This document shows positions 1-61,509 of a stretch of DNA of 64,000 bases, in pieces. The DNA comes from Ylistrum balloti (lineage: Eukaryota), in contig NW_026782320.1 in NCBI RefSeq assembly GCF_031769215.1, forward strand, positions 1 through 64,000, read 5' to 3'. A program made the position numbers and the translations under genes. The stretch's first letter is position 1. Each line of letters begins with the position of its first letter. The notes beneath the pieces were generated by a model. It was not told the origin of the DNA, searched no databases, and saw only the letters and a list, made by a program, of their open reading frames with translations.

Positions 1-405
1 TGGTATCCTAGCGAGGCTGTCACAATTATGCGGAACGAATGCATATATATATAACTTGGAATTAACATGGAACGAAATGTCATCAACATCCCCTTTTCTT
101 TAAGAATGGAAATAGACATCAAATTTGGCACTTATTGTTAGCACAGTTCTTGAGGCTTTAATAAATTGTATAAAACTTATCACCAGTATATTACTAGCAG
201 TAGTCTTTGGATGCAGCAGTATAAAGACAGTTCTATAACCTGTAATAACTAAAATGTTCAGAATTACACCATTACTTTATGAGATTAATTCTTTGAACAT
301 TAACACAAAATTAAACACTTGAACTTGAACACAGTTCCGGAACACCTAAAAAGTAAAAACTGGATCGAATTGCATCAGTCACACATCACTAGCGCACATA
401 GTCCT

Positions 406-2253
406 TCAAATAGGCTGGCTCGCGAATTGTCCTTGCTGGTCGTGATGATTGCATAATGCCAGGCTCGGCCTTGGGTGCACTCGGAGTGTCTGATTGTCCA
501 ACACTGGTCGCGATCGGAGTATTGTTTCCAGGCGCGGTTTGCTTGGTACCGATATCGACATCACGCGGCCCACATCCTCGTTGTTGACAACCACACCATC
601 GTATTGAGATGATTTGATAGGCTCACTTTTCACTGGACGTGTTGGCGTGTGATCACGAATGTTCACGTTCACTGTAGTTGGGCGTAGATGAACACGATTT
701 CTACGATAAATCGCACCATTGGGAGTTTGAAGCGTGTACGACCTATCAGCCACTTCATCTATTATCTTTCCTTGTCTCCAGATATCAGACGGGAATTTCT
801 TGTAGTACACATTCTGTCCTTTCCTCAGTTTCGGGAGTACTCGAGACTTCTTGTGGTAGTTACGTTTGACAATATCTCTACGGGTCATAGCTTCGACGTC
901 ACGCGGTTTTTGATGTATTGACGGCAACATAGTGCACGTACAATGTCCGAACATCATTTCGGCAGGACTCTTGCCAGTGTCCTGCCTTGGAGTATTTCTC
1001 AGTTCCAAAAGAGCTTCATATTGGTCAGATCCATCACGCAAGCACTTAATCATCATATGTTTGATGATCTTTACGGCTGATTCTGCCTTGCCATTACTCT
1101 TGGCGTAGTTTGGTGATGAGACCTTGTGATGGATTCCCCAGGATTTAACAAATTTGGCAAAGTCGTGGGAGGAGTACTGAGGTCCCCCGTCCGATACAAT
1201 TTCCGACGGTACACCAAATCGGGCAAATTGCTTCTTCAGCACATTTATTACTTTGTTCGAGGTAGTTGACGTCAGGTGCTCGACTTCAATGTAGTTGGAG
1301 TAGTAATCAACACTGACGATGTAATTACGCCCCTGAATTTCGAACAAATCGGTCCGATCTTTTCCCATGGAGTACCCTCTGTATGTTGTTTCAAGCTTTC
1401 CTGCGGGTTACTAGGTTTGAGTTCTTGACATGCCTCGCAGGCATCTGCCATTTGCTTGATATCTTTGGCCATGCCGGGCCAAAATATGGTGCCTCGTGTC
1501 CTACGCATCATACTATCATAGGCAAGATGAGCACTATGTAGTCTGGCTTTCATGTCCGCGCGTAACGATTGCGGGACGGATTCACCTTTCATCACAATAC
1601 CATCATGATATCCTAACGTCAGCGGCAAATTGCCTTGTCACTTCAATGCCATTTGTCTTGCATCGGGAATGTTACTGAAAGTACAGACATGATTCTCGGT
1701 CGCGGTTCAGTTTGAAACCACATCAACGCATCAGCAATGGTCAGGCAAATTGGAATTCGAAATCATATCGGTTCAAACGCACTAGAATGTTCTGTAGTCG
1801 TTTTGGCGCATCACTCAGTGGCTTTTCCAGTATCGATGCTAACGGTTTGTGATCATTTTGGATTGTAACGGCTCGTCCATACGTGTACTGATCAAAACGC
1901 TGGAGACCAAAAAGTACAGGGCCTCCTTCTCTATCTGTGCCCAGCTCAGATGTGTAGGGATGTGATGCAAATTCTATGGGTTGTCCACATTGCATCAGTA
2001 CGGCGCCAATTCCATGCTGAACAACGACTTCCTTGTTGGCGTCGAAATAAGCCAATTGTGCTTTCGTGGTTCGACTTGCGAACATGACATGACCAGTTCC
2101 ACTCCACATCTTTGCGCGTCAATGCACGAATGGGTTCGAAACTTGGCCACGTATTGCAAAATCGTTTCACACCAGAGACATCCTCGGGAGCTGGCCATAA
2201 TTGCCTTGATCTTCTTGTCTTCGGGCTTCACACCATCACTGGTTATCGAGTGA
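406..2253 (-). pseudogene. Gypsy-1 RNase H and integrase, frameshifted
   Basis: RH motifs (QNDHKPL), H2C2 (HSAH...CEAC), rve core (VDYYS, SDGGPQY, NGKAESAV) spread over several frames. Confidence 0.92.
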
Positions 2254-2364
2254 CCATGGAATGAAATCTCGCGTAGGCCAAAAGCCTTTTTATCCTCATT
2301 TAGAGTGATGTTCTGCTCCTTACACCGCTTATAGAGAGAGCGTAGTTTCCGGTCGTTGTCGCGA

Positions 2365-4161
2365 TTAGCTGCAATCGTCGCTTCCGCAACCGGCTACAAT
2401 GATGTCGTCCGCTATCGTGAAGACTCCATCTAAGTCACCTAACGCTTCAGTTATTTTCCTGTGGAAAATTTCGCTGGACACCTTGAGTCCGAAAGGTAGT
2501 CTCGCCCAACGAAAACGACCGAAAGGGGTTATCATGGTTGTGAGCTTGCTAGACTCCTCGTCAAGTCTCACGTGCCAATATGCGTCCTTGACATCTAGCT
2601 TGCTAAAACATCTAGCCTTGCTTAACTTTGGCAATACATCATCCAACACTGGGAGTTTGTGGTGTTCACGCATCAACGCCGTGTTAAGGGCTTGAGGGTC
2701 GATGCAAATGCGCAGCTTTCCATTCGACTTGTGAACAACTGCCATTTGACTTACCCATGTGGTAGGTTCTGTGACTGGTACGAGAACATTGCGCGCGACT
2801 AATGAGTCGAGCTCGCGTTTGACCTCATCCTGTAGTGCGATAGGGATTTTACGACATGGCAAGGCTTTCGCAGGTATCTCCGGGTTGACCTTGAGAGATG
2901 CTTCACCGAGATCTCCAAGTTGTTGTTGGTTCACAGCAGCAATAATCTTACTGTTATTTATTGTTACTAGTCCCATTTCTTGAACTGTCTGTAGTCCAAG
3001 AAGACACATTAGCCCATTAGGTACCACCACAAAAGTCACATTGTGTGCCTCACCAGTTTTCGCATTAGTCACCTCCAGATCCGCTTCACCAAGGGGTTTC
3101 AAATCTGACTTATTCCACATCTTCAATGTTATAGATGTAGGTCGAACTTGAGTTTTTCTCACAAACTTCTGATTGATAGTGTTCACATCTGCAGCACTGT
3201 CGAGTTGGAATCGAACCTCCTGCTCGTTCACTATCATGCACGCTGACACATTCTGATGTGGCTTGGATTTCACAGCTGATAGCCAATGATAATTGTCGTC
3301 ATCACTATCCTCACACTGTGTATCATTCCCTTCAACCAAATGTATCTTTTTACATTTTATTTTGAAGTGGTGTCTCCCCTTACAGTGGTCGCAGACTTTC
3401 CCATAGGCTGGGCATTTATACTTATTACGTTCATGTTTGCCCCCACAAAAATCACACTCACCATGTCTGTCCTCCGGTTTTTTGGGTCTGCTGGGTTTCA
3501 CAGAGCGTCCAGCACCAGGTTTCTTATTTTCGTCATTGGAATGTTGACTCCGATTACTGTTACTGGTTTTACGATGAGCCTTTGTGACTTTGTTTACTTT
3601 AGTAGCGACTGACACACCGCCATCCCTCAATTCTTTCACATGATTTGCTGACTGTTCAAAAGCACGACACAGTTTAATAGTTCCTTCTAGAGTGTTACTG
3701 TCGTCTTTCAATAACTGTAGCTGAAGCTTACCTTGACATGAGAAAATAATCTTGTCTCTGATCAGACGATCCTTCAAGGCGCCAAAATTACATCGATCGG
3801 CCCTGTGTCTCAACTCCGTAAGGAAAATGTCGAATGGTTCCTGCCACAGTACACACCAGAATCTGTGTTATTCAATAACCTCATTCGCTCGGGGATTACA
3901 GTATTTCTCAAGTTTTTTGAGTACTTTATCGGGATCCTTATCATCATTCTCGTTATCCCATGTGAATTGATCAAACAGTTCAACCACGTGTGGACCCGCA
4001 CAATGCAAAATAATAGCAACTTGGGTTACATTGTCCTTCGCCGCGGTACCGCTCGCCGACATGTAAATTTCCACTTGTCGTTTCCATTTCCGGAAATTTT
4101 CGGCAATATTACCTTCCGTAATGTTTAGTTTCTCCGGCAAACGAAATGCTGCTTCTGCCAT
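2365..4161 (-). pseudogene. Gypsy-1 gag-protease-RT with in-frame nonsense codon (TAA 3868-3870)
   Basis: ORFs 3868-4161 and 2365-3813 share a frame. Zn knuckles CDFCGGKH/CDHCKGRHH, protease LDSAAD, RT LPFGL...ADD. Confidence 0.92.
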
Positions 4162-4170
4162 GTTAAGTTT

Positions 4171-4183
4171 ACCGCTGCCACCA
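4171..4183 (-). promoter_or_regulatory. Primer binding site, tRNA-Leu(AAG/TAG) type
   Basis: Minus strand TGGTGGCAGCGGT is complementary to the animal tRNA-Leu 3' end ...ACCGCTGCCA-CCA. Confidence 0.85.
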
Positions 4184-4402
4184 TGTGAATAACTATATCT
4201 GGTCTAACAGGACCGACAGAATACAGATAACACTAACACGTGTAGCCGGCATGATCTACTGTATTCGACTGAAGCACATGGTACCACATAGGTAGACACA
4301 AAATTGGGATTGGTATCCTAGCGAGGCTGTCACAATTATGCGGAACGAATGCATATATATATATATAACTTGGAATTAACATGGAACGAAATGTCATCAA
4401 CA
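4184..4402 (-). repeat. 5' LTR of Gypsy-1 (219 bp)
   Basis: Begins TGTGAAT, ends CATCAACA; 4312-4402 is repeated at 1-88; directly adjacent to the PBS. Confidence 0.93.
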
Positions 4403-4731
4403 GTTCTGACCTGGACCTTGTGAATACTGTAATTTCTGAAAATAAGATATCAGGAAGTATTAATCAGCATTTCATTGAGATGGCCACGTATAGTCTGTTT
4501 CATGTACATGTACATATTTACGCATAACTCTACATCCCCCTTTTTGGGTATTCTACGAGAAATATGGAATTATCTCACAACATTAACTAAATGTAATGAA
4601 CTCAATAAAGCTATTCAAATTATTAATGTCTCGAAGTTATCTTTTGACCAGTCTTTGCAATGAACACATTTCAAGAGCTACCTACTCAAAAAATTAAAAT
4701 CTAGGAATTAACACAGTCAATCATCTAAAGT

Positions 4732-7703
4732 TCACAAGTCCATCCGGTTTGGAGCAACCGAGACTCTGCCTGAGCGAGTAGTGATCACGTTATCACTTCT
4801 AGAACCTACACCTATCTCTGAACTATTACTGACATGAACAGATGCATTTGACACAGTCTTTGACTTTGGAGACCCAGCTGGCTTTGGAGCCTTTACTGGG
4901 GTATTATACATAGTCTCTGCATTTGGTTCCTTCACATCACTGGGAAGGTCTCCGCATCCGGCACTGGTGTGCGGGTTGTCCGCCCTCATAGCTGGAGCTT
5001 GGACCAGCTGTCTCCTGTTCCGACGAATCTGACCTGACGGTGTACTGACGAAGTATGAGCGATCATTCATTGACTTAGTGATCGTTCCACTGAACCCTCC
5101 ACCGGGTCCCTTCACCCACACTGTTTCTCCAGGGTGTAGTTCCGGATGTTGAACTGTGCGATGTGATCGATCAAAGTGGTGTCTTTGGGATGTTCGATCT
5201 ATCCGTTCCTTGTCTCGAACATACTCAAGATCTGGCCACTTAGGAGAGAGATTAGCTGGACTCTCCGGAAGAGTTGTACGGAGCTTCCGGCCCATTAGTA
5301 GTTCGGAAGGACTGTAACCGTTCCGTAACGGCGTAGCACGATATGCTAGCAATGCTAGATACGGATCTTGAGAGCCACTAAGTAGACGTTTCATTGTCTG
5401 AACTCCTCTCTCAGCTTTCCCATTCCCTTGAGGGTAATGAGGGCTACTGGTTGAGTGATTGAATCCAGTCTTTCGCAAAGTCCTGAAATGTTGAACTAGC
5501 GTATTGTGGACCGTTGTCCGATATGATAGTCTCTGGTATTCCATGTCGCGCGAACATCGATTTGAGATGCGTTACTATCGCCTCTGATGTTGTGGAGCTC
5601 AGCTTAGCGATCTCTATGTACCTAGAGAAATAGTCAATCACCAGTAGATAGTTGACTCCTTTCCAGTAGAAAAGATCTGATCCCAATTTTTGCCAGGGAC
5701 GATCTGGGAAATCTGTAGGCATGAGAGGTTCTGGTCTCTCTATCCTGTGCTTAAGACATGATGGACAAGTTTTAACAATATCCTCGATCTCTCGGCTGAG
5801 ACCAGGCCACGGCACTTTACAATGCCCTGGTGTCCCTCGTGTAGTTTCTGTAATACTTCTGCTCTCATAGATGAAGGAATGACAAGTCTACTTCCTCTCA
5901 TAAGCAAACCATGACACACTGAAAGTTCCTCCCTCAACTCTCAGTATGGTCTAGTGGAGACGGTGATCGTAGGATGTTCATATCCGGGCCATCCATCCTG
6001 ACAGTAATTCATAATGATTTTACAAACACTGTCTTCTTGTAGTTTCAGACGAATTTCCTTAAGGCGATCTTCTGTTGCTGGCAGATCGTCTACAATAGCG
6101 TCAACATAAGCTTCAACTTCGTTTTGAAACTCCTCCTCAGATCCTTGCTGATCCAAAGGGGCTCTGGACAGAGCGTCCGCGGTATACAGTAATTTACCGG
6201 GCACATGCGCGATGCTGTAGTCATATCGCATATGGCGCATCCTAAACCTCTGAATCCTTGGGGGTAAATCAGAGATTGCCTTGGAACCTAGTAGGGAAAC
6301 CAATGGCTTGTGATCGGTCTCAATATGGAAGTGTATTCCTGTGAGCAAGTCTGACGACTTCTCGCACATCCAAGTTACAGCGAGTGCTTCCTTCTCCAGC
6401 TGTGCATACCGCTGTTCTGTAGCGCTCATAGATCGTGATGCGTATCCGACCGGCCTCCAGTCGTCCTCACCACTGTCCTTATGACGTTGGAGTATGACGC
6501 CCCCTATACCGTAAGATGATGCATCCGCAGAAATCTTGGTAACTGCCATGGGATCATACAATGACAGTACTGGCGTAGAGCTGAGGTCCTGTTTGATTAA
6601 CTCAAATGCCCGTGATTGAGGTTTGTCCCACATCCACGCGCTATCCTTCTGTAGTAAGTCACGGATTGGTTTGGAATGCTCTGCTATGTTTGGGGTGAGA
6701 ATCTTCCAAGCTGGTTCACCATTCCCATAAATCTTCTCACCTCAGTAACATTTGTAGGAGCTTCAAAGTTCACAATAGCTTTAACCTTTGCAGGGTCTGG
6801 GCGAATTCCTGCCTCATCTATGACGTGACCGACGAAAGTGACTCTTTTCTGGGAGAACTCGCACTTGTCGCTATTTAAGGTAATACCCGCTTTCTCAACT
6901 TTCTGTAACACAGTATCTAGACACAGATCATGTTCCTTCTGGGAAGTTCCAAATATCAATACATCGTCCATCTGACAGACAACTCCAGGCACATTATCTA
7001 GTAGATTACACATCCTTCGTTGAAAGTGTTCAGGTGCCGATGATATGCCGAAGGGTAGGCGGTTGAAACAGTACCGACCAAATGGGGTTATGAAGGTTGT
7101 CAACAATCTTGAGGATTGTTCTAGTGGAATCTGCCAGAATCCTGAGTTTGCGTCGATTTTAGAGAAGACTTTAGCTCCTGTCAATCGATGTAAAGTCTGT
7201 TCTACGCTTGGGAGTTGCAGGTGTTCCCGGCGAACCGATTTGTTGAGTTGTGTAAGATCAACACATATACGGACAGTTCCATCCTTTTTAGGTACCACTA
7301 CTAGACCTGAGCACCAATCCGTTGGCTCCTCGACAGGGGAGATAACCCCTAAGCTCTCCATCCTGGCAAGTTCAACCTTGACCTTGTCCATAAGTGGAAG
7401 TGCTACGCGCCTTGGCGAAGTGAGAGCAAATGGTGTGGCATCGTCGCGAAGTTTGATAGTGTAGTCGCCTTGAATCTTACCAAGTCCACTAAACAATTTC
7501 GGATACTTTTCCTGAATACCTACAGTTGCCTGTACTGAAGCCACTGTTTTCACAAGGTTGAGCTTTTCAATAGCTGGTCGACCTAGTAAAGGCTTACTCA
7601 ATGTCTTGATGACATAAATATCTGTCTCAGCCCGAGTTCCTTTCTCAGTAGATAATGTACTTGAAAATTTTCCCAACACTTTGAGACGGTTCTGACCTGG
7701 ACC
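4732..7703 (-). pseudogene. Gypsy-2 pol (protease C-terminus, RT, RNase H, integrase), frameshifted
   Basis: GPGQNRLKVLGKF; RT LPFGISSAPE/QMDD; RH DASSYG/TDHKPL; IN SDNGPQY/NGKAERGV across ORFs 6684-7742, 5941-6633, 5444-5815, 4732-5544. Confidence 0.93.
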
Positions 7704-7792
7704 TTGTGAATACTGTAATTTCTGAAAATAAGATATCAGCAAGTATTACTGAAAATAAGATATCAGCAAGTATTAATCAGCATTTCGTTGAG

Positions 7793-8794
7793 ATGGCCAC
7801 GTATCAGGTACAACCCCCAGAAAATTTTACGTTCACTAAACCTGAGGAATGGCCCAAATGGCTGAAAAGGTTCGAACGGTTTCGAGTAGCGGCAGGGTTA
7901 GGAGCCAAAGAGGGCCCAATCCAGGTCAACACATTTATATACTCGATGGGAGGTCAGGCTGAAGATATTATCAAGTCGTTTGGTCTGTCTGATGATGACG
8001 CGAAAGATTACAGGAAGGTTGTAGAAAAGTTCGACAATTACTTCATAACCAGACGAAATACTATATTTGAGAGAGCCAGGTTCAACCACAGAAGACAAAA
8101 CGAGGGCGAGTCTGCAGAAAGCTTTATTATGGCACTGTATGCATTAGTAGAGCACTGTGAGTATGGAGATTTGAAGTCAGAGATGATAAGAGACCGTATC
8201 GTTGTAGGCATTCGCGATAGTCGGTTATCAGAGAAACTACAGCTTGACGCAACACTTACTCTGGAGAAGGCCGTAAACCAGGTACGACAGTCAGAGGCGG
8301 TCAAGAAACAACAGGCAGTTGTAAGAGACAAAGACCCTATTGCAAGTAGTAGTCAGGCAAATAACAGTGTGGATGTGGTGTTCCGGAAAGGCAATAAACA
8401 CAAATTCTCAGGAAACCGGAAGTCGTCAGAAAACCGGAAGTCCACAGAAAACCGGAAGTCATCTGATACTCGGTCAAATCCAGAATGTCATAAATGTGGA
8501 TTTAGACACAGGAAAGGGAGCTGTCCAGCGAAAGATGCAGAGTGTCGGAAATGTAAGAAAAAAGGTCATTATGCGAAGAAATGTCGTTCGACAGTCGGTG
8601 AATTGCAAACCTTTTTAGGAGCAGTAGAGAGTGAAGGAGCCTTACCATGGACCATAGATCTAGTGGTTCAGACAGGTCAAAAGGATACACTAGTACGGTT
8701 CAAGATTGATACAGGGGCAGATGTTACAGCTATACCCGAGAGTGTCTTTCAACGAATCGGTCAGAAGTTGGAACACTCAACAAGAATTCTAAAA
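7793..8794 (+). pseudogene. Gypsy-2 gag and protease N-terminus, inverted relative to pol
   Basis: MATYQVQPPENF...; CCHC knuckles CHKCGFRH/CRKCKKKGH; protease IDTGAD; ends STRILK, whose natural continuation GPGQN is on the opposite strand at 7703. Confidence 0.9.
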
Positions 8795-8830
8795 GATCCA
8801 AGTGTTTGTCAAGTGTCAACCCACATAACA

Positions 8831-8846
8831 TGGTGTCAGAATGTGG
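8831..8846 (+). promoter_or_regulatory. Primer binding site, tRNA-Leu(CAA) type, after an LTR 3' end (...CATAACA)
   Basis: TGGTGTCAGAA immediately after a CA terminus. Confidence 0.75.
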
Positions 8847-9243
8847 AAATCATCAGTCGAGCGGTAAGAGGTTACCATCGCAGTGAAGTCATGCGATATA
8901 AACAGTTTTAATGTGACTTTCACGCAGTACTCAGCGGCAGTATCTCGCACACGTGGTTTGGCTCATGTATTCTCAGGTCTATCAGTCGGAGGTGGCGACT
9001 ACGATTTGAACTTTGATGTGGTATGATTGAATACTGTAATTTCTGAAAATAAGATATCAGCAAGTATTAATCAGCATTTCGTTGAGATGGCCACGTATAG
9101 TCTGTTTCATGTACATGTACATATTTACGCATAACTCTACAATAATGATTTATCGTCTCTATGACTCTGCCCGTGGCCGGGCATTGTCCAATCTATTGGA
9201 ACGGACATTTATTATAGAATTCAGATTAAAAATACGTAACAGT

Positions 9244-10168: not shown

Positions 10169-10525
10169 AAGACAAGTCTGGCTTGTGGTACGTCAGGTTT
10201 ATTGGAGAAATAGTAAAAGCTGAAAGAAATTAAAGGTTGACATAAGTAATCTGTGTTGTGTTTTGATTCTTATTCAATTACAGATCTACAAGTGTACATA
10301 TTATAATTCTACACGATTTCTATACTATATAGAACAATGAAGTGCCTATGGCTTATCTAGAACATTTGACTACTTAAATTATCTAATTCTCACCTTGAGA
10401 TCATGAAACAAGTCACTTGGTAATTTTCATAAAAATGAGGGACATGTATCCTTAATATTTCTTACATGTGTACTGCACCAACACTAATGTCACATATTAG
10501 CAATTACATTAACATATTCTGTTAA

Positions 10526-12480: not shown

Positions 12481-12484
12481 AGTG

Positions 12485-14949: not shown

Positions 14950-14959
14950 TTTGAGTGAC

Positions 14960-15200
14960 AAATTTCACCATTAACACCTTTGTGTTCCAAACATACTTTT
15001 TATTTTGTCAAGTATTGGAATTGTCATATTTACTGACACAGAGACTCGAATACTCGTCAACGAGCAAATATTCTCCTGACGGTAATGGCCCCAAAAGTCC
15101 ACACTAACATTTCCCCATGGTCCTGCAGGAAGTTCCGACATTTTCAATGATTCCATACTTTGTTTTTCTGCTGTTAGGACGTGACAAGCTAAACAATCTT
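14960..15200 (-). pseudogene. Short Gypsy integrase fragment
   Basis: ELPAGPWGNVSVDF matches the start of the rve core; degenerate. Confidence 0.65.
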
Positions 15201-16925: not shown

Positions 16926-16935
16926 ATAGTTATAC

Positions 16936-52400: not shown

Positions 52401-55400
52401 TAATAGTCTATTACAACAAACACGTAGTGTCCTGACGGTAAAGGTCCTAGCAGGTCTATCGAGAGATCCTGCCATGGTCCTGATGGCATAGGGGTCGGCG
52501 ATATGGGCTCGGGCCGTGGCAATGAACTTACCACTTGACAGCCATGACATGACTTGACATAAGCCTCTACGTCCTTATCTAAAGTTGGCCACCACACTTT
52601 AGTTCGTAGCTGTTGCTTTGTAGCGACAATACCAAGGTGTCCCTGGTGAGCTAATTTAATACATTCTGTTCGTAACACTGCTGGAATAACTAATCGTGTT
52701 CCACGTAACAGCAGGTACCCTATCTGGGACAGTTCATCTTTTACCGCATAATACTTTACACATTCCTTTTCCCACTGGTCTGCAGATAAAGCCTTTCTCA
52801 CCAGTGTTAGCTCGGGATCAGACTTGGATTTTTCCTCCACCTCACGAGTTGTCATTGCTTTTGGGGTGCTTCTCTCTGCCACAGCTCTGACATAATGCTC
52901 TGTTTCTGTTTGTAGATCTGTTACACCACTGTGTTTCCTTTTCACAAGTCGCGACAATGCGTCAGCAATGTTCTGTTTACCAGGTTGATACCTAATACGA
53001 AAATTGTAGGGCATCAGTCTCATAACCCACCGTTCAATACGCGCGTTAGGTTTGGATTTTGGACCATACAGTATTTCCAATGGTTTGTGGTCTGTCACCA
53101 GCTCAAAATCAATGCCATACAGGTATATGTGGAACTTTCCACATGCCCAAACCACTGCTAAGGCCTCCTTTTCTGTGGTTGAGTACCTTCTTTCAACATC
53201 AGTCAGTGTACGACTAGCATAGCTGATAACTTTGGTCTCGCCTTCAGATTCCTGAACGAGTACAGCCCCTAAACCTACATCACTCGCGTCAGTCACAAGT
53301 TGTGTTTTTGTTGCGTCTAATCGGAAATGTCCCAATGTATCTGCGTTCACAAGGCTTTCCTTTAATGCTCGAAAACAATCCTCCTGTTCCTGTCCCCACA
53401 AAAACTTTACACTGGACTTGGTAAGTCGTCTCAAGGGTTCAGACAATGTAGCCAAGTTTGGAATATAGCGAGCACTAAAGTTGACAATGCCTAAAAAGCT
53501 TCTCACCTCAGATGCACTTTGTGGCCTCTGAGCCTCAATAATGGCCTTTGAACGATCGGATGTCGGCGCGATTCCATTTTTTGACAATACATGACCCATA
53601 AATGTGATCTTGTCCATTCCCCACTCGCATTTCTCCTTGTTCAGAGTTAAGTTCTTTTCCTGCAGTCTACACAATGCTTTCTCTAGCCTTTGATCATGTT
53701 CATGTTTATCCCTGCCATGAACCACAATATCATCGGATATATTCTGAACCCCTTCACAATCATGAAATGTCTGTGATATGATTTGTTGATACTTCTCTGG
53801 TGCTGAACTGATACCAAACATCAGCCGCTTATACCTGTATAATCCTTGATGCGTCACAAATGTAGTTATCTCCCTTGATGAATCTTCTAATTCTATCTGG
53901 TGATATCCATACTTCATATCTAATTTGCTGAACACTGTACTCCCATTCATATTGTACAGTATCTCGTCCACAGTGGGTATTGGGTGTCTCTCACGGACTA
54001 TAGCTTGATTAGCCTGTCTCATATCCACACATATCCTGATATCGCCATTAGGTTTTGGGACAACTATTACCGGGCTAACCCACGGCGTTGGGTCATTCAC
54101 CTTCTCGATAATGTCCTGATCCTCAAGTTCATCAAGTTTAGCACCGACTTTCTCTCGTAGACTGTAAGGAATCCTATACATAGGTTGTGCCACCGGTTTT
54201 ACAGATGGATCAATATGAAGCTTCAATTTGAAGTCATTCAGCTTCCCAATTCCTCCAAAACATGACTTGTACTTATCCAATATATCATCATGGACTGAGT
54301 AGATTTTCAGCACTCCGAGATCTACTGCCGTAGCCCTCCCTAATAAAGCCGAACCTGTGCCATCAAGTACATAAAAGGCAGCCTCAATTTCATCATCACT
54401 TCCGTCAACAGACACCGTAGTAATAAATTTGCCAAGTAACGATAAAGGTTTATCTGCTCCATATGAACACAGCCGTTTGTCAGTTTTCTCTGAACGACAC
54501 ACAATCTTTCTTTTCTTTAAGTCCTCCCATGTAGGCTTGTCAATGATATTGACTGTCGCTCCACTATCCACAACCATATCAACTTTGTGACCACCAACCA
54601 TGAACGAAAGTCTGTCTGCATCTGTGTGTTGTACACTAAATGCATACTCTGCCTCTGACTCTACACAGTTCACTTTACCTTTGACCTTTGACAATGTTGA
54701 CCTCTCTGCCTTTAGGCAACGTGGTTCCTTTGTTTTACAGCATGCACGAAAATGCCCCATCTTACCACACTTATTGCACTTTTTGTTTTTCGCTGGACAG
54801 CCTGAATCTTTCGCGAAATGACCTTCACGTCCACATCGAAAACATAAAGCCTTTGTGCTACTACTTGTTGACCGTTTTGTGTCCTTTTGTTTCACAAAGT
54901 TTATCTGATTGACTGAGCTTAGAGGAGACTCCATTTTCTTAGCCTGGACATCTGCCATTTCCATTGTAGCCGCGATTGTGCGTAATTGATCAAGTGTCAA
55001 TTCCTTCCCCTTTTCCAGACATTTGGTTCTAAGTTTATGAGATTTACATTTTTCTATTATTTGATCCCTTATTTGTTCCTCAATGTTCCCAAATTCACAA
55101 AGAACTGCTTGTCTTCTGAGTCTGGTGATGAATTGTTCGATAGACTCGTCTTCCTGACACATTGACCGAAATACATACCGTTCGTATGGCACGTTTATTT
55201 TTGTTTCAAAATGTTTACTCAGTGTGGCTACCGCTACAGCATACTCATCACCTCCCTCCGCCTCTGTTAGCGTGAAATAGATGTCTTGAACTGGTACACC
55301 TGCACAGTGTAGTAATAACGCTTTCAACTGTTTCTTGTCTGTTACACCCTTGCCAGTGGCAAATAAATCGAAACTACGAAGCCATCGCTTCCATTCCTGC

Positions 55401-58400
55401 TGTAAATGACCTGGGTCACCATGTGCGTTGAACGGCTCAATACCATTCAGGTCGATCGAAGACATTTTCACAAATGACAGTTCGTATTTCTTACATACAC
55501 CAGTTCTTGATACATTTACTAACGTATTCGCAATATCCTCGTCACCAGATTGTCGTGTCGAATTGAATCAGAGCCCGAATTGAATCATAACACACAAAAC
55601 TGGTCTCGTTCAATGGCCGCCTGTTTTAATAATACTGCCCGGATGTTTCACAAGAACGATAACTCCACACATAAGACAATCAGAGTTATTTCCCATTACT
55701 CTACATCTAAACACTACACATCGTGACTTACTTTCGATATGAATCCACGAAAAAATCGTCTACAAGGAGGGTCATCAGACTGGACACAGTCTTCATGGGT
55801 AGTGATGCAAGGTATTCATACTTAAACACCTTGTTCTGTGCTTCAACACCATTGTTGGTGTTTACAACCAGAGTGAGACCATCTCCTCTATAGGCCCACA
55901 CCCACATCTTTAAAACAGAGGAAATTAGAATAAACTAAAAATATTTCAAAACTGGCATGTATCTACTCATGTTGAGGATTATTAATCAAAGATCAGCTAA
56001 AAATCATGTGATCTGTGGAATTTGTCATGATAATCAAGAAATGTCTCAAGCAGAAGGCTTCTACTTGGATGTATGAAAGTATGGAAAGACAGGTAAATCA
56101 AAAACAGCATCTGGAGTTACTGTTATCGCTATAATTCACAGTCTTAGGCTTCTTATGATATACAGTAATCATAATAGTCAAACTCTTTTCGGAGCAGATC
56201 AAGTTACAAACTCCTTAACTTGTCCTTCCGTACCAAATACTCGTGGCAACTTCATTTCGCGTTTTCAAAGTCTAATTGGGCCAATTTAATTTTGTGACCG
56301 TCCAAGTTAAAATCACTCAAGCGTATTGGCTTCGGTAAATACCTGTCATATTGAAACTATTTCACAGCAATTAATTTTTGCAAATTTTCATTCAACGGGA
56401 AATTAGCGAAAATAAATCGCACACGAAAATGTTTGTTTACAGTATATCATTGGTCTACACTGCCTAGCTACAGAGGTAATGAATAGTATAAGTATCCCTT
56501 ATTTACTACAATGTATACAAAATTATATTGCTGTGCTTCGATCTTTTATTAATTAATATTACCTTGTGTTTATCATTGGCTAGCCATTGCCCATTGATAT
56601 ATTGACGAAGCTTTGGCTGACTCTTCCATATTTCACTGTCATGAAGGTTCTTCAAATTCTTGTTGAAATCAGCTTCAGTAAATGACTCTGCCACTGACTA
56701 AAACATAAAATTTTCTCTCAAATCAACATTTGTTAATAAACCCTAAGCTCTGTCCTAAATTAGATATGTGTACATGATATTTACATGTTGAATTAATTGC
56801 TGATCTATTCAGGCATAAACTTACATTTAATAACTCTGAAGTTTGATCTTGACTTGTCACATCATGCTTTGAGGCAACCAACCATCTGTGCCAGGCTTGT
56901 TTTCTATGAAAGTCGCATATGAAGATGTTTGAACCTGTTAACATATTAAAGATAATAATGTTACATTTCAGCTTTAAATTTATTTCTGTTATTTAAGACT
57001 ACATGCAACAGGATCTTCCTGCAGCTTCTTTATTATTCCAGTTGCCACTTACAATGTCTATGAAAGCAATCTAAGTCTTACAGGACATGTTTTTTTGTTA
57101 AGAAAAAAACAACTCTTTTTTATTATATTCCTGCCTGACATACAGGCACAATATGGAAAAAGTTAGGTCACATGAATGTTCACACCTAAGATAAACATAA
57201 AACTGACCTGGGAAAACATTCTGAATGGCATTTGCTTCTACCTCAGAGGAATCTATCATGAAACCTTTACAGGTCCAGTTTGGATTGTTATCCTTGATGA
57301 CTTGTAAAGCTTCTGCTACTGAGATGGAGTCTTCTCTTTCTGTGATGAAAGCACCAACAACACAGAAGCCATCATTTGTCTGAACACACAGAAAAAACAA
57401 TGGCAATGCATACTTTGTGGTTCTGTATGTGGCATCCAGATACACAAGCTCCTTTCCATACCGTGAAAGCAATCTTCTCTGCCAGGAAGACTGGTAAATG
57501 ACTAGGAAAGACTGATCTTCATTTACAACAAAGCAGCCACCATCCTCTTCAAAGTCATCTTCAATGACAGGACGCTTCACAAATGATGACTTTCGGAAAG
57601 TCCACATGTCATCTGGACGCTCCTCTTGCCACACACGTATTTTCTCTTCCAGGTCTTCCTGGTCAATCAGGCTGTGCAATGTTTTGCGCCTCTGCCGATA
57701 TATAATTTTTCTGAGGTCATCTTTGCTTGGATAAAATCGCCGATTTGTGACTCTGGGCAACTCTCGGTCTTTGAAGAGATCTTTTATGTAGATCTTAAGG
57801 TGTCGATGCATTTCTTTTGGATTATAGACCCCTTCATCTACAAGCTTACAAATTTTCTTCAGAACTCTTTCATCAATTGGGGATTTTAAATCAGCAGCCT
57901 ACAAGAGGACAAAGTACATCACATGACATAACAATAACTATACTAGCAAACTACCAAAGTCAGGAAGGGCCCCGCTGGCTGCTTTTGTCTCACATAATCA
58001 AAAATCGTTATAAAATGTACTAACGGAAAGGTTTTGTCACAAGGAACAGTGATATCAAGTATGAAAGCCAGATAGAACCAGCGAATGATGTGAGAGAGTG
58101 TATATCTGGTAGTACCTGTTGTAATATTGAAATGACAACAGATAGAACCGGACAATGATGTAAGATAGTGTAGATCTGGTGGTATCTGTTGTAATATTGA
58201 AATGACAACAGATAGAACCAGACAATGATGTGAGAGTGTAGATCTGGTGGTATCTCTTGTAATATTGAAATGACAACAGATAGAACCAGACAATGATGTG
58301 AGAGAGTGAAGATCTGGTTGTATCTGTTGTAATATTGAAATGACAACAGATAGAACCAGACAATGATGTGAGAGAGTGTAGATCTGGTGGTATCTGTTGT

Positions 58401-61400
58401 AATATTAAAATGACAACAGATAGAACCAGACAATGATGTGAGAGAGTGTAGATCTGGTGGTATCTGTTGTAATATTGAAATGACAACAGATAGAACCAGA
58501 CAATGATGTGTGAGAGTGAAGATATGGTGGTATCTGTTGTAATATTGAAATGACAACAGATAGAACCAGATAAAGGTGTGAGAGAGTGTAGATATGGTGG
58601 TATCTGTTGTAATATTGAAATGACAACAGATAGAACCAGACAAAGGTGTGTGAGAGTGTAGATATGGTGGTATCTGTTGTAATATTGAAATGACAACAGA
58701 TAGAACCAGACAATGATGTGAGAGAGTGTAGATCTGGTGGTATCTGTTGTAATATTGAAATGACAACAGATAGAACCAGACAATGATGTGAGAGAGTGTA
58801 GATCTGGTGGTATCTGTTGTAATATTAAAATGACAACAGATAGAACCAGACAATGATGTGAGATATTGTAGATCTGGTGGTATCTGTTGTAATATTAAAA
58901 TGACAACAGATAGAACCAGACAATGATGTGAGAGAGTGAAGATCTGGTTGTATCTGTTGTAATATTGAAATGACAACAGATAGAACCAGACAATGATGTG
59001 AGAGAGTGTAGATCTGGTGGTATCTGTTGTAATATTAAAATGACAACAGATAGAACCAGACAATGATGTGAGAGATTGTAGATCTGGTGGTATCTGTTGT
59101 AATATTAAAATGACAACAGATAGAACCAGACAATGATGTGAGAGAGTGTAGATCTGGTTGTATCTGTTGTAATATTAAAATGACAACAGATAGAACCAGA
59201 CAATGATGTGTGAGAGTGAAGATCTGGTTGTATCTGTTGTAATATTAAAATGACAACAGATAGAACCAGACAATGATGTGAGAGTGAAGATCTGGTGGTA
59301 TCTCTTGTAATATTGAAATGACAACAGATAGAACCAGACAATGATGTGTGAGAGTGAAGATCTGGTGGTATCTATTGTAATATTAAAATGACAACAGATA
59401 GAACCAGACAATGATGTGAGAGGGTGTGTAGATATGGTTGTATCTGTTGTAATATTAAAATGACAACAGATAGAACCAGACAATGATGTGAGAGAGTGTA
59501 GATCTGGTGGTATCTGTTGTAATATTGAAATGACAACAGATAGAACCAGACAATTATGTGAGAGAATGTAGATCTGGTTGTATCTGTTGTAATATTGAAA
59601 TGACAACAGATAGAACCAGACAATGATGGGAGAGAGTACAGTAGATCTGTTTTAATATTTAGATGATAACTTATAGAATATTTTTTGTTTAATCATTGAT
59701 ATATTGCATTTTATATAGAAATGTACATATGATTGAATTATCCAAAGAGAATATTCTATTTCTTTTGTAATTGCATTTTCAAAAATGATTAATATAAATT
59801 ACAAGTATGATTGTTAGCTTTTTACAAGAATATATAACACATATATATGGCCTATACTTGATACTTACCATTCCCAGGATGTGATTTTTGTGTTCCTTTG
59901 GGAGATCTATATATATGACTTTGCGTTGTTCAACCTGCTCATAGCAGGATGAATGAAGGTCATTTCTCAGTTTTGTTGACATACCTTCACGCCAGTACCT
60001 TGTATCCTGTGGAACCTAGCAAAATTGAATGGATCAAAATGTATACTCAACATCAAAAAGTAGATATTATTCAATGACATTATCTATTTTTGACAAAATG
60101 ACTGGGGATCATGTCAGTGCTACAAATATGTATTGGTATTACTAGATATTAGTATGTAAGATGTATTAGGTTAGACAGAAATATTGGAATTTAGGAAAAA
60201 TGTTGGCAATGTAAAAAAAATCACAAATGAATTGCATTGATACCCGGTAATTGAAATATGTATCCTTACCACATTTTTTTTTAAATTAAAGTTTTGATGG
60301 TGATTAATTTTTGATTTTCTTCACTTTTACTGACAACTACCAGAACTGTTAAAGACAATTTGATACCTTGTACTGGTCGAAATGAATGACTTCCCTCATT
60401 ACTATAGCCGCAGGACATCCTTTTTTTTGTACCTGTCAGCCTCTTCCTGCTTGACAGCAAGCTATAGCCATGTTCTCCCACCTGGCTTTGATTGGTGTCC
60501 TAAAAAAGTATGTCATCAATGAGGTTATACTCTGACCCTTAAATAAGTCTAACCTCCACATGATTGTTCTTACATTACTTTATTTAATTGTTTGTTAAAA
60601 AATGTATAATATAAACTAATCCAACATAATGAAATTGATATTGATTTGCTTGTAATAGAAAATGTCTTACTTTTGTTTTTTTGGTCCTGTGCTGACGGCC
60701 TTGATGACATTCCATCAGTTTTAGGCCCACTATCATAAAAGGTGCACCATTTGATGGAATGTCACACTGGTGGGCAACCTTTCCTTCATTTTTGAATCGA
60801 ACAAAATGGTCTTCAACTCCATTAAGTTCTGCAGACAGTAAATATACATTACAAAATACATATATATACACCAAACTGTTACTTCACTATTGTTTAACTG
60901 CATGATTTAACTTCCTTAAGCAGAAGTTCTCTGATGAGTTGGTACAAATACATATTAGTAGATAAATATTGTACTTACTAAATGTGTATGTGAAACTTCC
61001 CCTTGATCAAGACAACAAATTTTATATATGTATTAAAAGATATCTTTAAACGCTACCTCACATTAAAATTCTCATGGTGACTACAAACCTTAAATACACT
61101 TCATAACAGAAACTTCATGTATACAAACCCTGATCCTGTCAGAAAATTTGTTTGTTGATCGAATCACATAACAGTGCACATGTAGACTAAGGACTACGGT
61201 ACCTAAAAGTACTGGGAATGTATTCCTGATGTTACATGTTTGTCTTGAAATGGTGTACACTTCTGTCCTCAGAATATCAGAAATTTATCACAGTCCTCAA
61301 TATTCCTATCATTTCTACTTGAATGACTTACCAAGACTAAAATGTCCAAAATTCTTCGTACATCTTGTCACAGAGTACGTAGTGGATGTCTGGTAGCAGA

Positions 61401-61509
61401 ATTCACGAATAATGTCATTGCAGTCCTCAGGATCAGAAACCTGGCCATGGTAGGGGTCAGTAACATGATCAGCATCAAAATACTGTACCCACGGCAATTG
61501 TTCCGACAT
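37484..61509 (-). CDS. Multi-exon MULE-family transposase-like protein with CaRF-like N-terminus, DDE core, SWIM, Ulp1/C48 protease and PHD finger (about 1330 aa or more)
   Basis: Hand-built GT-AG exons: 61509-61332, 60828-60671, 60499-60367, 60015-59869, 57898-57208, 56934-56825, 56697-56563, 55907-55732, 49220-48442, 47057-46971, 46065-46006, 45858-45800, 45364-45314, (unresolved gap), 44491-44261, 44033-43920, 42254-42192, 41892-41744, 41331-41200, 40783-40635, 39968-39848, 37762-37484. Motifs LDATY, MIDSS, CDFH, NNGVE, CEC..LPCKH, NHW/LDS/QKDGNACG, PHD C4HC3. One +1 frameshift in an A8 run at 60421-60428. Confidence 0.8.
37958..39155 (+). mobile_element. Nested non-autonomous Helentron/HINE-like repeats in the last intron (inner copy about 38343-39078)
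   Basis: AACAAGAG and AAACTAGA starts, GACG/GGAC tracts and terminal hairpins (GCCCCTG...CAGGGGC). Confidence 0.6.
39263..39829 (-). mobile_element. HINE-like element with internal tandem repeats of about 124 bp
   Basis: Minus strand starts AACAAGAGGCCC; subterminal GCTCACCTG inverted pair; GACG tract near the 3' end. Confidence 0.7.
40053..40596 (+). mobile_element. HINE-like element, same family as 39263-39829, opposite orientation
   Basis: AACAAGAGGCCCATGGGCC start; GGTCATCTGAC/GTCAGATGACC inverted pair; GACGG tract; TAAAAA end. Confidence 0.72.
42556..43570 (+). mobile_element. HINE-like element with two internal repeats of about 167 bp
   Basis: AACAAGAG start, duplicated core 43160-43490, (GACG)n tract, terminal hairpin and ATAAAAA. 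Confidence 0.68.
47880..48331 (+). mobile_element. Degenerate HINE-like repeat(s)
   Basis: AACAAGAG/AACAAGAAG starts and GATGACCTAAAA end as in the 40053 copy. Confidence 0.45.
51009..55718 (-). mobile_element. Gypsy-5: intact full-length Ty3/Gypsy (Mag-like) with 168-bp LTRs and TSD CATCG
   Basis: LTRs 51009-51176 and 55551-55718 differ at 1 position; TSD at 51004-51008 and 55719-55723; PBS TGGTGACGAGGAT (tRNA-Ser-like); PPT from 51177. Confidence 0.97.
51485..55471 (-). CDS. Gypsy-5 Gag-Pol polyprotein (1328 aa), uninterrupted
   Basis: CFRCGREGH, VDSGA, ISDD, TDAS/TDHKPL, H2C2, SDNGPQF, NGEVERQN in one frame. Confidence 0.97.
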   Translation of the reverse strand: MKMSSIDLNGIEPFNAHGDPGHLQQEWKRWLRSFDLFATGKGVTDKKQLKALLLHCAGVPVQDIYFTLTEAEGGDEYAVAVATLSKHFETKINVPYERYVFRSMCQEDESIEQFITRLRRQAVLCEFGNIEEQIRDQIIEKCKSHKLRTKCLEKGKELTLDQLRTIAATMEMADVQAKKMESPLSSVNQINFVKQKDTKRSTSSSTKALCFRCGREGHFAKDSGCPAKNKKCNKCGKMGHFRACCKTKEPRCLKAERSTLSKVKGKVNCVESEAEYAFSVQHTDADRLSFMVGGHKVDMVVDSGATVNIIDKPTWEDLKKRKIVCRSEKTDKRLCSYGADKPLSLLGKFITTVSVDGSDDEIEAAFYVLDGTGSALLGRATAVDLGVLKIYSVHDDILDKYKSCFGGIGKLNDFKLKLHIDPSVKPVAQPMYRIPYSLREKVGAKLDELEDQDIIEKVNDPTPWVSPVIVVPKPNGDIRICVDMRQANQAIVRERHPIPTVDEILYNMNGSTVFSKLDMKYGYHQIELEDSSREITTFVTHQGLYRYKRLMFGISSAPEKYQQIISQTFHDCEGVQNISDDIVVHGRDKHEHDQRLEKALCRLQEKNLTLNKEKCEWGMDKITFMGHVLSKNGIAPTSDRSKAIIEAQRPQSASEVRSFLGIVNFSARYIPNLATLSEPLRRLTKSSVKFLWGQEQEDCFRALKESLVNADTLGHFRLDATKTQLVTDASDVGLGAVLVQESEGETKVISYASRTLTDVERRYSTTEKEALAVVWACGKFHIYLYGIDFELVTDHKPLEILYGPKSKPNARIERWVMRLMPYNFRIRYQPGKQNIADALSRLVKRKHSGVTDLQTETEHYVRAVAERSTPKAMTTREVEEKSKSDPELTLVRKALSADQWEKECVKYYAVKDELSQIGYLLLRGTRLVIPAVLRTECIKLAHQGHLGIVATKQQLRTKVWWPTLDKDVEAYVKSCHGCQVVSSLPRPEPISPTPMPSGPWQDLSIDLLGPLPSGHYVFVVIDYYSRYYEVDITKDISSERMIDALENMFARYGLPVSITSDNGPQFVSALFEEFLCDNGIHHRRVTPLHPAANGEVERQNRSIMKRIRIAHAESRDWKKDLRTYLLAYRGTPHAVTGVSPAELMFGCKLRNKVPQLDVHRNETIEEGVRDRDWFAKVKNKLYIDEKRGAKESDLVEGDQVLVKQSRNNKLSSPFNPTPFKLQRKVGNQCTLVSPEGVEYKRNSTHVKKYVQSPESLVESKSTTATSESESLTMSDNNVSKQDKADDDVMHRSTNDGMESNLSHQVEIPRSRPVREKTKPKRFDDFEMT
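58070..59649 (+). repeat. 70-bp hairpin satellite, about 22 units (array 2), in an intron of the MULE-like gene
   Basis: Unit GATCTGGTGGTATCTGTTGTAATATTGAAATGACAACAGATAGAACCAGACAATGATGTGAGAGAGTGTA; 18-bp inverted arms (2 mismatches) around a 12-nt loop. Confidence 0.97.

What the first reader, a model, noticed from the sequence alone, without database searches (positions are those of the whole stretch)
1..61509. All 14 independent coding transposons in 61 kb share one orientation: candidate uni-strand piRNA cluster (TE trap)
Seen: Gypsy-1, -2, -3, BEL, the Gypsy PR fragment, Gmr1-like, the IN fragment, Penelope, the YR gene, Ngaro, Gypsy-4, hAT, MULE and Gypsy-5 all encode on the minus strand. 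Only the last element (THAP, 62.3 kb) is on plus. A fair-coin expectation for 14/14 is about 1.2e-4 two-sided (about 1e-3 for 14/15). The short non-coding repeats occur in both orientations. Established: Drosophila flamenco is a single-strand locus of co-oriented, nested, truncated and young TEs antisense to the cluster transcript. Inference: this is a comparable cluster in a mollusc, covering seven TE superfamilies and still capturing young elements.
Basis: partly seen in the sequence, partly recalled or inferred. Interest (0 to 1): 0.85.

Follow-up and report, generated by a model that had tools for sequence, protein, structure and literature searches.

The report
Co-oriented transposon nest in a scallop
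A 61-kb stretch made almost wholly of transposons from many different families has nearly all of them pointing the same way; this is the layout of a one-strand piRNA "transposon trap" such as Drosophila flamenco, but no RNA data could be reached, so it stays a candidate.

Summary
In window 1-61509, every transposon gene piece identified by Pfam or homology lies on the minus strand. These form 12-14 independent units from different families. There is one exception, a 1.2-kb inverted gag-protease piece inside Gypsy-2 (7685-8908, plus). The first plus-strand element is the THAP/Harbinger at 62.3 kb.

The insertions are separate events: Gypsy-4 and Gypsy-5 have their own target-site duplications and 99% identical LTRs, and Gypsy-1 to -5 share only 25-50% of residues.

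The window is the first 64 kb of a 174.5-kb, transposon-saturated contig, probably from the scallop Ylistrum balloti. Over the rest of the contig the bias is weaker. Identified TE genes split 12 minus to 4 plus. Counting unexplained ORFs of 150 aa or more, the split is about 14 to 9.

A small genome-wide control gave 10 co-oriented and 7 opposed pairs among neighbouring RT or integrase genes of different families. A fair coin is therefore a reasonable null, and chance is unlikely but not excluded.

The piRNA-cluster reading fits the architecture. No RNA run holds the locus, so piRNA output, the transcribed strand and a promoter could not be tested. A long host transcription unit remains a live rival.

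First readers of this scan raised the same idea, unchecked, on the next window of this contig and on two other pieces of this genome.

The parts
1..4400 (-). Gypsy-1: integrase 409-1637, RNase H 1744-2118, protease-RT 2368-3867; frameshifted. The contig starts just after its 3' end.
   Evidence: Pfam rve, Integrase_H2C2, RT_RNaseH, RVT_1
4421..9141 (-). Gypsy-2, bounded by 114-nt TG..CA repeats (98% identical). Pol lies at 4735-7745 on minus. Its gag-protease segment 7685-8908 is inverted onto the plus strand. The flanks show no matching target-site duplication.
   Evidence: Pfam; repeats; polypurine tract next to the left repeat when read on the minus strand
9650..10192 (-). Gypsy-type RNase H fragment (Gypsy-3)
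   Evidence: Pfam RT_RNaseH, E 1e-28
11150..11704 (-). BEL/Pao C-terminal fragment (DUF5641)
   Evidence: Pfam DUF5641, E 6e-25
11634..12299 (-). Protease-like fragment; weak; may belong with the BEL fragment
   Evidence: Pfam Asp_protease_2, E 0.008; BLASTP to the Gypsy-4 protease region, E 2e-7
12261..14977 (-). 5' part (gag, zinc knuckle, protease, integrase zinc finger) of a Gmr1-like Gypsy family, in which integrase follows protease. The family has more than 30 copies at 86-94% identity elsewhere, several next to open frames of about 1440 aa.
   Evidence: Pfam; BLASTP; genome DNA search; rve and RVT_1 places beside those copies
14974..15237 (-). Separate integrase zinc-finger fragment
   Evidence: BLASTP to Gypsy-5 residues 993-1041, E 8e-7
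16426..16929 (-).
   Evidence: Pfam GIY-YIG, E 0.0012, below the curated cut-off
19356..21155 (-). Tyrosine-recombinase-like gene; weak. It has a paralogue on the same strand at contig 123.5-126.2 kb.
   Evidence: Pfam Phage_int_SAM_1, E 0.13, and Phage_integrase, E 0.024, in the paralogue; BLASTP 33-43% identity; no homologue found by word search
22303..24987 (-).
   Evidence: Pfam RVT_1, E 2e-11
26368..26943 (-). GDSL/SGNH hydrolase-like ORF, 34% identical to one inside an LTR element at contig 100 kb
   Evidence: Pfam Lipase_GDSL_2, E 1e-6; BLASTP
27668..32327 (-). Gypsy-4: one open gag-pol frame of 1280 aa, 119-nt LTRs with 1 mismatch, target-site duplication CTATA, no env
   Evidence: Pfam; LTRs and duplication; three proteins of Ylistrum balloti fall in its 90%-identity cluster, two of them 1330 aa long
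34233..36465 (-). hAT transposase (BED finger, Hermes-like DNA-binding domain, hAT dimerisation domain)
   Evidence: Pfam
36577..36928 (.). 5 copies of a 70-nt satellite, inverted relative to the array at 58069-59637
37487..37798 (-). PHD-finger ORF fragment; owner unknown
   Evidence: Pfam PHD, E 9e-6
48440..60883 (-). MULE-like transposase gene in pieces: ALS2CR8 N-terminus 60587-60883, MULE/RNase H-like part 57101-57898, SWIM finger 48440-49249. It is interrupted by the 70-nt satellite array (58069-59637) and by Gypsy-5.
   Evidence: Pfam; tandem repeats
51009..55718 (-). Gypsy-5: open frame of about 1330 aa, LTRs of about 170 nt with 2 mismatches, target-site duplication CATCG, nested in the MULE-like gene, no env
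   Evidence: Pfam; LTRs and duplication
62320..64000 (+). THAP domain followed by a Harbinger-type transposase (continues to contig 64539). This first plus-strand element marks the right edge of the co-oriented run.
   Evidence: Pfam THAP, E 1e-9, and HTH_Tnp_4, E 1e-15

Best explanation
The first 61.5 kb of this contig is a transposon graveyard built by many separate insertions: five unrelated Gypsy families, BEL, a Gmr1-like element, an RT element, hAT, a MULE-like gene and others. Only minus-strand insertions have been kept.

Integration itself is not known to prefer a strand, so such a run points to a directional filter. The most likely filter is transcription of the plus strand across the whole stretch. 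The best-fitting known system is a one-strand piRNA source locus. In that model a long plus-strand precursor carries the elements in antisense, is cut into piRNAs that silence active copies elsewhere, and tolerates or favours antisense insertions while sense insertions are lost.

Shown here: the orientation run, the independence of the insertions, the nesting, the youth of some elements, and the presence of intact relatives elsewhere in the genome.

Inferred, not shown: transcription, its strand, piRNA production, and selection as the cause.
For: All identified TE gene pieces in 1-61509 are on the minus strand, 12-14 units.

The elements are unrelated families, with 25-50% amino-acid identity between the Gypsy elements. 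They are separate insertions: target-site duplications CTATA for Gypsy-4 and CATCG for Gypsy-5, and polypurine tracts on the minus strand.

Nesting occurs in the same orientation. Gypsy-5 sits inside the MULE-like gene. At the contig's far end an env-bearing element sits inside the env gene of an older relative, with the two env fragments matching residues 363-491 and 479-610.

All four elements with LTR pairs of 99% identity or more on the contig are on the minus strand.

Active families are represented. Gypsy-4 has relatives at 90% identity or more. The Gmr1-like family has copies next to 1440-aa open frames.

Contig-wide, identified TE genes split about 26 minus to 4-5 plus. Retroelements split about 17 to 1.

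Control: neighbouring RT or integrase genes of different families elsewhere in the genome are co-oriented in only 10 of 17 pairs. Co-orientation is therefore not a general habit of this genome.

Precedent: in Drosophila, strand-biased LTR content alone has located flamenco-like clusters that small-RNA data later confirmed (PMC10643416, PMC11400887). piRNA clusters rich in Gypsy, Penelope and Harbinger are reported in another scallop and in oysters (PMC11067994, PMC6128900).
Against: There is no RNA evidence at all. No RNA run holds the locus, and the one run laid on it is contigs of unknown kind.

The near-total bias stops at 62 kb. In 64-174.5 kb the identified genes split 12 to 4, or about 14 to 9 with unexplained ORFs. 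ORF length splits 70:30 there, against 95:5 in the window.

A plus-strand Gypsy lies at 138.6-143.3 kb.

Polyadenylation hexamers are not depleted on the plus strand, 183 against 181.

The window's Gypsy elements lack env, unlike the elements captured by Drosophila flamenco-like loci.

The contig is short and probably unplaced, a setting where strand-bias predictors give more false positives (PMC11400887).

The putative promoter would lie beyond the contig's start.

The run was picked out by a reader scanning 759 windows of this genome, which inflates the nominal p value.
Confidence: 0.4

Rival explanations
1. The stretch lies inside a long plus-strand transcription unit that is not a piRNA source, such as a giant intron of a host gene or a long non-coding RNA. 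Sense-oriented retroelements, which bring polyadenylation and splice signals, are removed by selection. This leaves an antisense-biased population, as is well known for LTR elements and LINEs in mammalian introns (established knowledge).
For: The bias is strongest for retroelements, about 17 to 1 contig-wide. It is weak for DNA transposons, about 7-8 to 3-4. That is what selection against terminators predicts. An 80% antisense bias gives 17 or more out of 18 with probability about 0.1, so the strength of the bias does not exclude this rival. Both ends of the contig are assembly breaks, so flanking exons could not be seen.
Against: No host-like gene was found on the plus strand anywhere in 174.5 kb. 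The plus ORFs with Pfam or feature matches are transposases or a Gypsy. One single-copy plus ORF pair at 86.4-87.3 kb has only unnamed relatives. A stretch of 60 kb or more saturated with full-length, young LTR elements is unusual for an intron. Polyadenylation hexamers show no plus-strand depletion.
Confidence: 0.2
2. Chance. Orientations are random, and the run of 12-14 is the extreme tail found by reading many windows and choosing where to end the count, just before the first plus-strand element.
For: The count ends at 61509, set after seeing the data. The unit count is 12-14 rather than a firm 14, and one inverted piece is set aside. 759 windows of this genome have been read. The genome holds at least 5437 RT-like places, so many trials exist. 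Beyond 62 kb the bias is modest and, with unexplained ORFs counted, not significant.
Against: 2 x 0.5^12 to 2 x 0.5^14 is 5e-4 to 1e-4. Only transposon-saturated windows can hold this many units, and they are rare: RT density here is about ten times the genome mean of 0.5 per 64 kb. The rest of the contig leans the same, predicted way among identified genes, 12 to 4 (one-sided p 0.04), and all four young LTR elements agree. Different-family neighbours elsewhere are near 50:50.
Confidence: 0.15
3. A structural cause without transcription. Examples are local duplication of blocks that already hold co-oriented elements, or an unknown orientation preference of insertion in this chromatin.
For: Elsewhere in this genome, same-family RT or integrase neighbours are almost always co-oriented, about 21 to 1, at regular spacings. 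Examples are C1188 at 14.5-kb steps, and C1113, C84 and C149. Tandem or segmental duplication of transposon-bearing blocks is therefore common.
Against: The window's elements are different families with their own target-site duplications. Self-comparison of the contig shows no large internal duplications beyond LTR pairs and satellites. The junction-rich stretch 9200-16400 has no second copy as a block anywhere in the genome.
Confidence: 0.07

Closest known systems
Drosophila flamenco and flamenco-like unistrand piRNA clusters (PMC10643416, PMC11400887)
   Same: Tens to hundreds of kb saturated with nested, truncated and some young LTR retroelements, with a strong one-strand orientation bias. 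They are recognisable from strand-specific TE content alone. An env-bearing Gypsy-type element and an older env-bearing relative lie on the same strand at the contig's far end.
   Different: Here the co-oriented set spans many superfamilies, including DNA transposons. In Drosophila the bias is carried by env-bearing Gypsy elements only, and the window's own Gypsy elements lack env. No piRNA, precursor or promoter evidence exists here. The bias weakens beyond 62 kb. The host is a bivalve, with no synteny or follicle-cell context.
proTRAC-predicted piRNA clusters of molluscs (Crassostrea gigas and Lymnaea stagnalis, PMC6128900; Mizuhopecten yessoensis and others, PMC11067994)
   Same: TE-rich source loci in bivalves. 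The scallop clusters are reported as rich in Penelope, Harbinger, Gypsy and Helitron, families also present here.
   Different: Those were defined from small-RNA reads and are short: 7 clusters totalling 49 kb in M. yessoensis. The papers' text and the supplements held here give no account of TE orientation or strandedness. This locus is defined by orientation only.
Antisense bias of retroelements inside introns of host genes (mammalian LTR and L1 elements; established knowledge)
   Same: Retroelements are retained mainly antisense to a long transcription unit, and DNA transposons are less affected.
   Different: No host exons were seen in 174.5 kb. TE density and the number of full-length young elements are far above what introns usually hold.

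Membership tests
Uni-strand (flamenco-like) piRNA cluster | Abundant 24-31-nt, 5'-U-biased small RNAs that map to one strand of the locus | not testable with these tools
   The only run found is of unknown kind, kept as contigs, and holds 0.32 of the sampled words. None is on record as RNA.
Uni-strand (flamenco-like) piRNA cluster | One long precursor transcript from a defined promoter at one end | not testable with these tools
   The window starts at base 1 of contig C463, so the upstream side for a plus-strand transcript is missing. No RNA reads were available.
Uni-strand (flamenco-like) piRNA cluster | Region saturated with nested and truncated transposon fragments | tested here: met
   TE genes or fragments lie nearly end to end over 0.4-37 kb and 48-61 kb, with nested insertions. 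The unannotated stretches that were tested are repeats with many genomic copies.
Uni-strand (flamenco-like) piRNA cluster | Strong one-strand orientation bias of retroelements | tested here: met
   Window: 12-14 units minus, with one inverted internal piece on plus. Contig-wide, retroelements split about 17 to 1. Whether they are antisense to a transcript is unknown.
Uni-strand (flamenco-like) piRNA cluster | Recent captures of families that are active elsewhere (trap behaviour) | tested here: met
   Gypsy-4 and Gypsy-5 LTRs are 99% identical with target-site duplications. Gypsy-4 has relatives at 90% identity or more. Copies of the Gmr1-like family and of the env-bearing family carry long open frames on other contigs.
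Uni-strand (flamenco-like) piRNA cluster | Selective enrichment of env-bearing Gypsy elements (Drosophila flamenco-like loci only) | tested here: not met
   Within the window, Gypsy-4 and Gypsy-5 are 4.7 kb long with a single gag-pol frame and no env. Env (Baculo_F) elements occur only at 162-173 kb of the contig. Enrichment against the genome was not measured.
Intronic antisense TE accumulation in a host gene | Host exons on the opposite strand to the elements, flanking or interspersed | tested here: inconclusive
   No plus-strand ORF of 100-150 aa or more with a non-TE Pfam domain was found on the contig. Short exons would be missed, and both flanks are contig ends. Gene calls for this genome are withheld.

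The most novel reading that the evidence does not exclude
This is a true flamenco-type one-strand transposon trap in a bivalve. Unlike the Drosophila loci, it would collect retroelements of many superfamilies (Gypsy, Gmr1-like, BEL, tyrosine-recombinase elements) and some DNA transposons in antisense. It would be one of several such loci in this genome, since first readers flagged three more windows. That would show that the trap architecture is either ancient in bilaterians or has arisen independently outside insects.
Probability: 0.3. Interest if true: 0.65.

Novelty: new member of a known kind. Interest (0 to 1): 0.4.

Why it matters
Transposon traps with strict antisense orientation are well documented mainly in Drosophila. 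In molluscs, piRNA clusters have been called from small-RNA reads, but their internal architecture has not been described. If small-RNA data confirm this locus, strand-biased TE content could be used to find piRNA source loci in the many bivalve genomes that lack small-RNA data. The range of elements held by such a trap would also prove wider than env-bearing Gypsy elements. If it is not confirmed, the locus is a caution that runs of co-oriented elements turn up when many windows are read.

Tried and rejected
1. RNA evidence. Laying it on 9200-15199 gave 95-99% identical pieces of TE copies and said nothing on expression or strand.

2. A control from random TE-dense windows. Gene calls for this genome are withheld from the contig look-up. 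In its place I counted neighbour pairs by eye in the 148 best rve and 150 best RVT_1 places. The sample is small.

3. Locus duplication. The 97-99% copies of 40-42 kb on C522, C140 and C1225 suggested haplotigs. The junction-rich 9200-16400 has no second copy as a block, so those hits are copies of one repeat family.

4. Oriented non-coding elements as an independent test. No Rfam family and no tRNA was found in 144 kb.

5. Signals of plus-strand transcription in the DNA. AATAAA occurs 183 times on plus and 181 on minus. CpG observed/expected ranges from 0.33 to 1.08 with no pattern. Neither is informative without a genome baseline.

6. The negative GC and AT skew of the plus strand is explained by purine-rich coding strands on minus and is not independent evidence.

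7. The equal 4542-nt LTR spacing of Gypsy-4 and Gypsy-5 suggested one family. Their proteins are only 30% identical, so this is coincidence.

8. The merged-unit ORF count fuses adjacent same-strand elements and so undercounts co-oriented runs. I use it only for ORF length per strand.

9. The supplements of PMC6128900 held here contain no cluster directionality.
Full report
**Where the window lies**

The window is bases 1-64000 of contig C463 of a 648.5-Mb assembly in 1372 contigs. The contig is 174,540 bases long, and I fetched all of it. The exact product of the Gypsy-4 frame is held in public protein collections. It clusters at 90% identity with three proteins named for the scallop Ylistrum balloti, so that is the likely organism. 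The window has no gaps.

**Checking the observation**

I translated every stop-to-stop ORF of 100 aa or more on both strands. I scanned them against Pfam and compared them with each other.

On the minus strand lie:
- Gypsy-1: integrase, RNase H, protease-RT, 409-3867.
- Gypsy-2 pol: 4735-7745.
- A Gypsy RNase H fragment: 9650-10192.
- A BEL DUF5641 fragment: 11150-11704.
- A weak protease-like fragment: 11634-12299.
- A gag-protease-integrase-finger block: 12261-14977.
- A separate integrase-finger fragment: 14974-15237.
- An ORF with a sub-threshold GIY-YIG hit: 16426-16929.
- A gene with sub-threshold tyrosine-recombinase hits: 19356-21155.
- An RT element: 22303-24987.
- A GDSL ORF: 26368-26943.
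- Gypsy-4: 27668-32327.
- A hAT transposase: 34233-36465.
- A PHD fragment: 37487-37798.
- A MULE-like gene in pieces from 60883 down to 48440.
- Gypsy-5: 51009-55718, nested in the MULE-like gene.

Ten plus-strand ORFs outside these gave no Pfam match. On the plus strand I found only two things. One is the gag-protease part of Gypsy-2 (7685-8908), an internal inversion that another first-reader note also describes. The other is THAP plus a Harbinger transposase from 62320 onward.

The minus ORFs at 57946-59651 lie in a 70-nt satellite array and are not genes. The 'Penelope' and 'YR' labels are weak. Two pairs of neighbours (protease fragment with BEL fragment, and YR-like gene with RT element) might each be one element.

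**Independence of the insertions**

The five Gypsy elements share only 25-50% of residues. Gypsy-4 has 119-nt LTRs with one mismatch and the target-site duplication CTATA. Gypsy-5 has LTRs of about 170 nt with two mismatches and the duplication CATCG. In both, a polypurine tract sits next to the left LTR when read on the minus strand.

The block 12261-14977 is the 5' part of a family with more than 30 copies at 86-94% identity elsewhere. In those copies an integrase core follows directly, and the open frames reach about 1440 aa.

The junction-rich stretch 9200-16400 occurs as a block only here. The locus is therefore not a duplicated segment. The near-identical copies of 40-42 kb on three other contigs belong to one repeat family.

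**Extending the count**

Leftward is impossible, because the window starts at the contig's end.

Rightward, over 64-174.5 kb, these TE genes are on the minus strand:
- a YqaJ/SAP element (65.3-67.7 kb)
- BEL (69.1-72.7 kb)
- an LTR element with a GDSL gene (96.06-103.6 kb, LTRs 99.8% identical)
- a YqaJ/PHD element (108.3-110.9 kb)
- a zf-C17orf113 gene (113.5-115.5 kb) and a relative of it (173.8-174.5 kb)
- a paralogue of the YR-like gene (123.5-126.2 kb)
- a DUF6589 gene (128.4-131.6 kb)
- a 1063-aa ORF (148.4-151.6 kb)
- an env-bearing Gypsy-type element with gag, pol and a Baculo_F env (162,985-172,523; LTRs 99.5% identical; duplication CTAG)
- the older env gene into which that element is inserted; its two fragments match env residues 363-491 and 479-610

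On the plus strand are a second Harbinger (105.5-106.8 kb), a Gypsy (138.6-143.3 kb) and a DUF1280/RAG1-like transposase (155.6-157.8 kb).

That gives 12 to 4 if the THAP/Harbinger is included (one-sided p 0.04). Five plus-strand ORFs of 150-211 aa and two on the minus strand remain unexplained. Counting them gives about 14 to 9.

By ORF length the window splits 8374 to 408 residues and the rest 10,259 to 4337. So the contig as a whole leans to the minus strand, at about 85% of identified genes. The near-total bias is a property of the first 62 kb and of the last 14 kb.

All four LTR elements on the contig with 99% or more LTR identity are on the minus strand. Retroelements split about 17 to 1, and DNA transposons about 7-8 to 3-4.

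**Is it more than chance?**

The nominal figure of 1.2e-4 is correct for 14 of 14. It is inflated by three things: the end point was chosen after seeing the data, the unit definitions are flexible, and 759 windows of this genome have been read.

I could not fetch random windows. As a small control I used the 148 best integrase and 150 best RT places in the genome and counted adjacent pairs within 60 kb on one contig.

Pairs that look like the same family (equal scores and lengths) are co-oriented about 21 to 1, often at regular spacing (C1188, C1113, C84, C149). This points to tandem or segmental duplication. Pairs of different families are co-oriented 10 times and opposed 7 times.

A fair coin, or at most 0.6, is therefore a reasonable null for unrelated neighbours. 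It gives 1e-4 to 1e-3 for the run.

RT-like places number at least 5437, about 0.5 per 64 kb, and the window holds five RT genes. Windows able to hold such a run are therefore rare. I put chance at about 15%.

**What it most likely is**

Integration of LTR elements is not known to choose a strand, so a one-way population implies a directional filter after insertion. The obvious filter is transcription through the region.

Two known situations give this picture. One is a one-strand piRNA source locus. The other is a long host transcription unit whose sense-oriented retroelements are purged.

The first fits better in several ways:
- the stretch is saturated with TEs
- it holds several full-length young elements
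- nesting keeps the orientation
- no host-like plus-strand gene appears in 174.5 kb

In Drosophila, strand-biased LTR content alone has located such loci, later confirmed by small RNAs (PMC10643416, PMC11400887). The second situation cannot be excluded. An 80% antisense bias would give the retroelement counts with probability about 0.1. Short exons would escape my scans. Both contig ends are assembly breaks.

Nothing here shows transcription. No RNA run holds the locus. Polyadenylation hexamers are equal on both strands. CpG depletion is patchy.

**Comparison with what is known**

piRNA clusters are already reported in oysters, a pond snail and a scallop (PMC6128900, PMC11067994). Neither those papers' text nor the supplements held here describe TE orientation.

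Compared with flamenco-like loci, this one has the density, nesting, bias and young captures. It differs in three ways. It mixes many superfamilies. Its window elements lack env. It has no expression evidence. I therefore treat it as a candidate new member of a known kind, not a new kind.

**Earlier notes of this scan**

First readers flagged the same idea on the next window of this contig (s1-263010). My count over that stretch supports it only in part. They also flagged it on two other pieces of the genome (s1-254197, s1-244176), which I could not reach. These are leads, not evidence.

**Verdict**

- The orientation run is probably real.
- The piRNA-trap reading is the best single explanation, at about 0.4.
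- A long non-piRNA transcription unit stands at about 0.2, chance at about 0.15, and structural causes at under 0.1.

Interest is moderate. The decisive experiment is simple: small-RNA mapping with junction-unique reads.

Noticed in passing
window 27667-32327 and 51009-55718: Gypsy-4 and Gypsy-5 have exactly the same LTR start-to-start spacing (4542 nt), yet their polyproteins are only 30% identical. This is apparently coincidence.
   Followed up: partly
window 36577-36928 and 58069-59637: A 70-nt satellite occurs as 5 copies beside the 5' end of the hAT gene. It also occurs, inverted, as 22 copies inside the MULE-like gene. All six frames stay open over the long array, which produces spurious ORFs and spurious Pfam Vanin_C hits.
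   Followed up: partly
contig C463 162,262-173,037 (loci L012-L013): An env-bearing Gypsy-type element (gag, 1376-aa pol, Baculo_F-like env; LTRs of about 800 nt, 99.5% identical; duplication CTAG) is inserted, in the same orientation, into the env gene of an older relative (38% identical). Equal-scoring RT places with 1376-aa frames lie on C118 and C443.
   Followed up: partly
other contigs of G000: C1188 6.9-36.8 kb, C1113 0.7-63.6 kb, C84 1108-1139 kb, C149 747-790 kb, C690 12-75 kb: Same-family RT or integrase genes recur 3-5 times at regular spacings of 11-25 kb, always on one strand. They look like tandem or segmental arrays of transposon-bearing blocks.
   Followed up: no
contig C463 86,353-87,310 (L005:2353-3310, plus strand): Two adjacent open frames (150 and 211 aa) have no Pfam match and no paralogue at E below 1e-40 in this genome. 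Only five unnamed relatives turned up in public assemblies. This could be a low-copy gene or an unknown element.
   Followed up: partly
contig C463 65.3-67.7 kb and 108.3-110.9 kb (L003, L007, minus strand): Two related elements carry a YqaJ/alkaline-exonuclease-like domain, one with SAP and one with PHD. The transposon class was not determined.
   Followed up: no
window 39312-40534: 145-nt repeats in inverted arrays flank a 0.6-kb spacer. The unit has hundreds of 86-91% identical tandem copies on many contigs.
   Followed up: no
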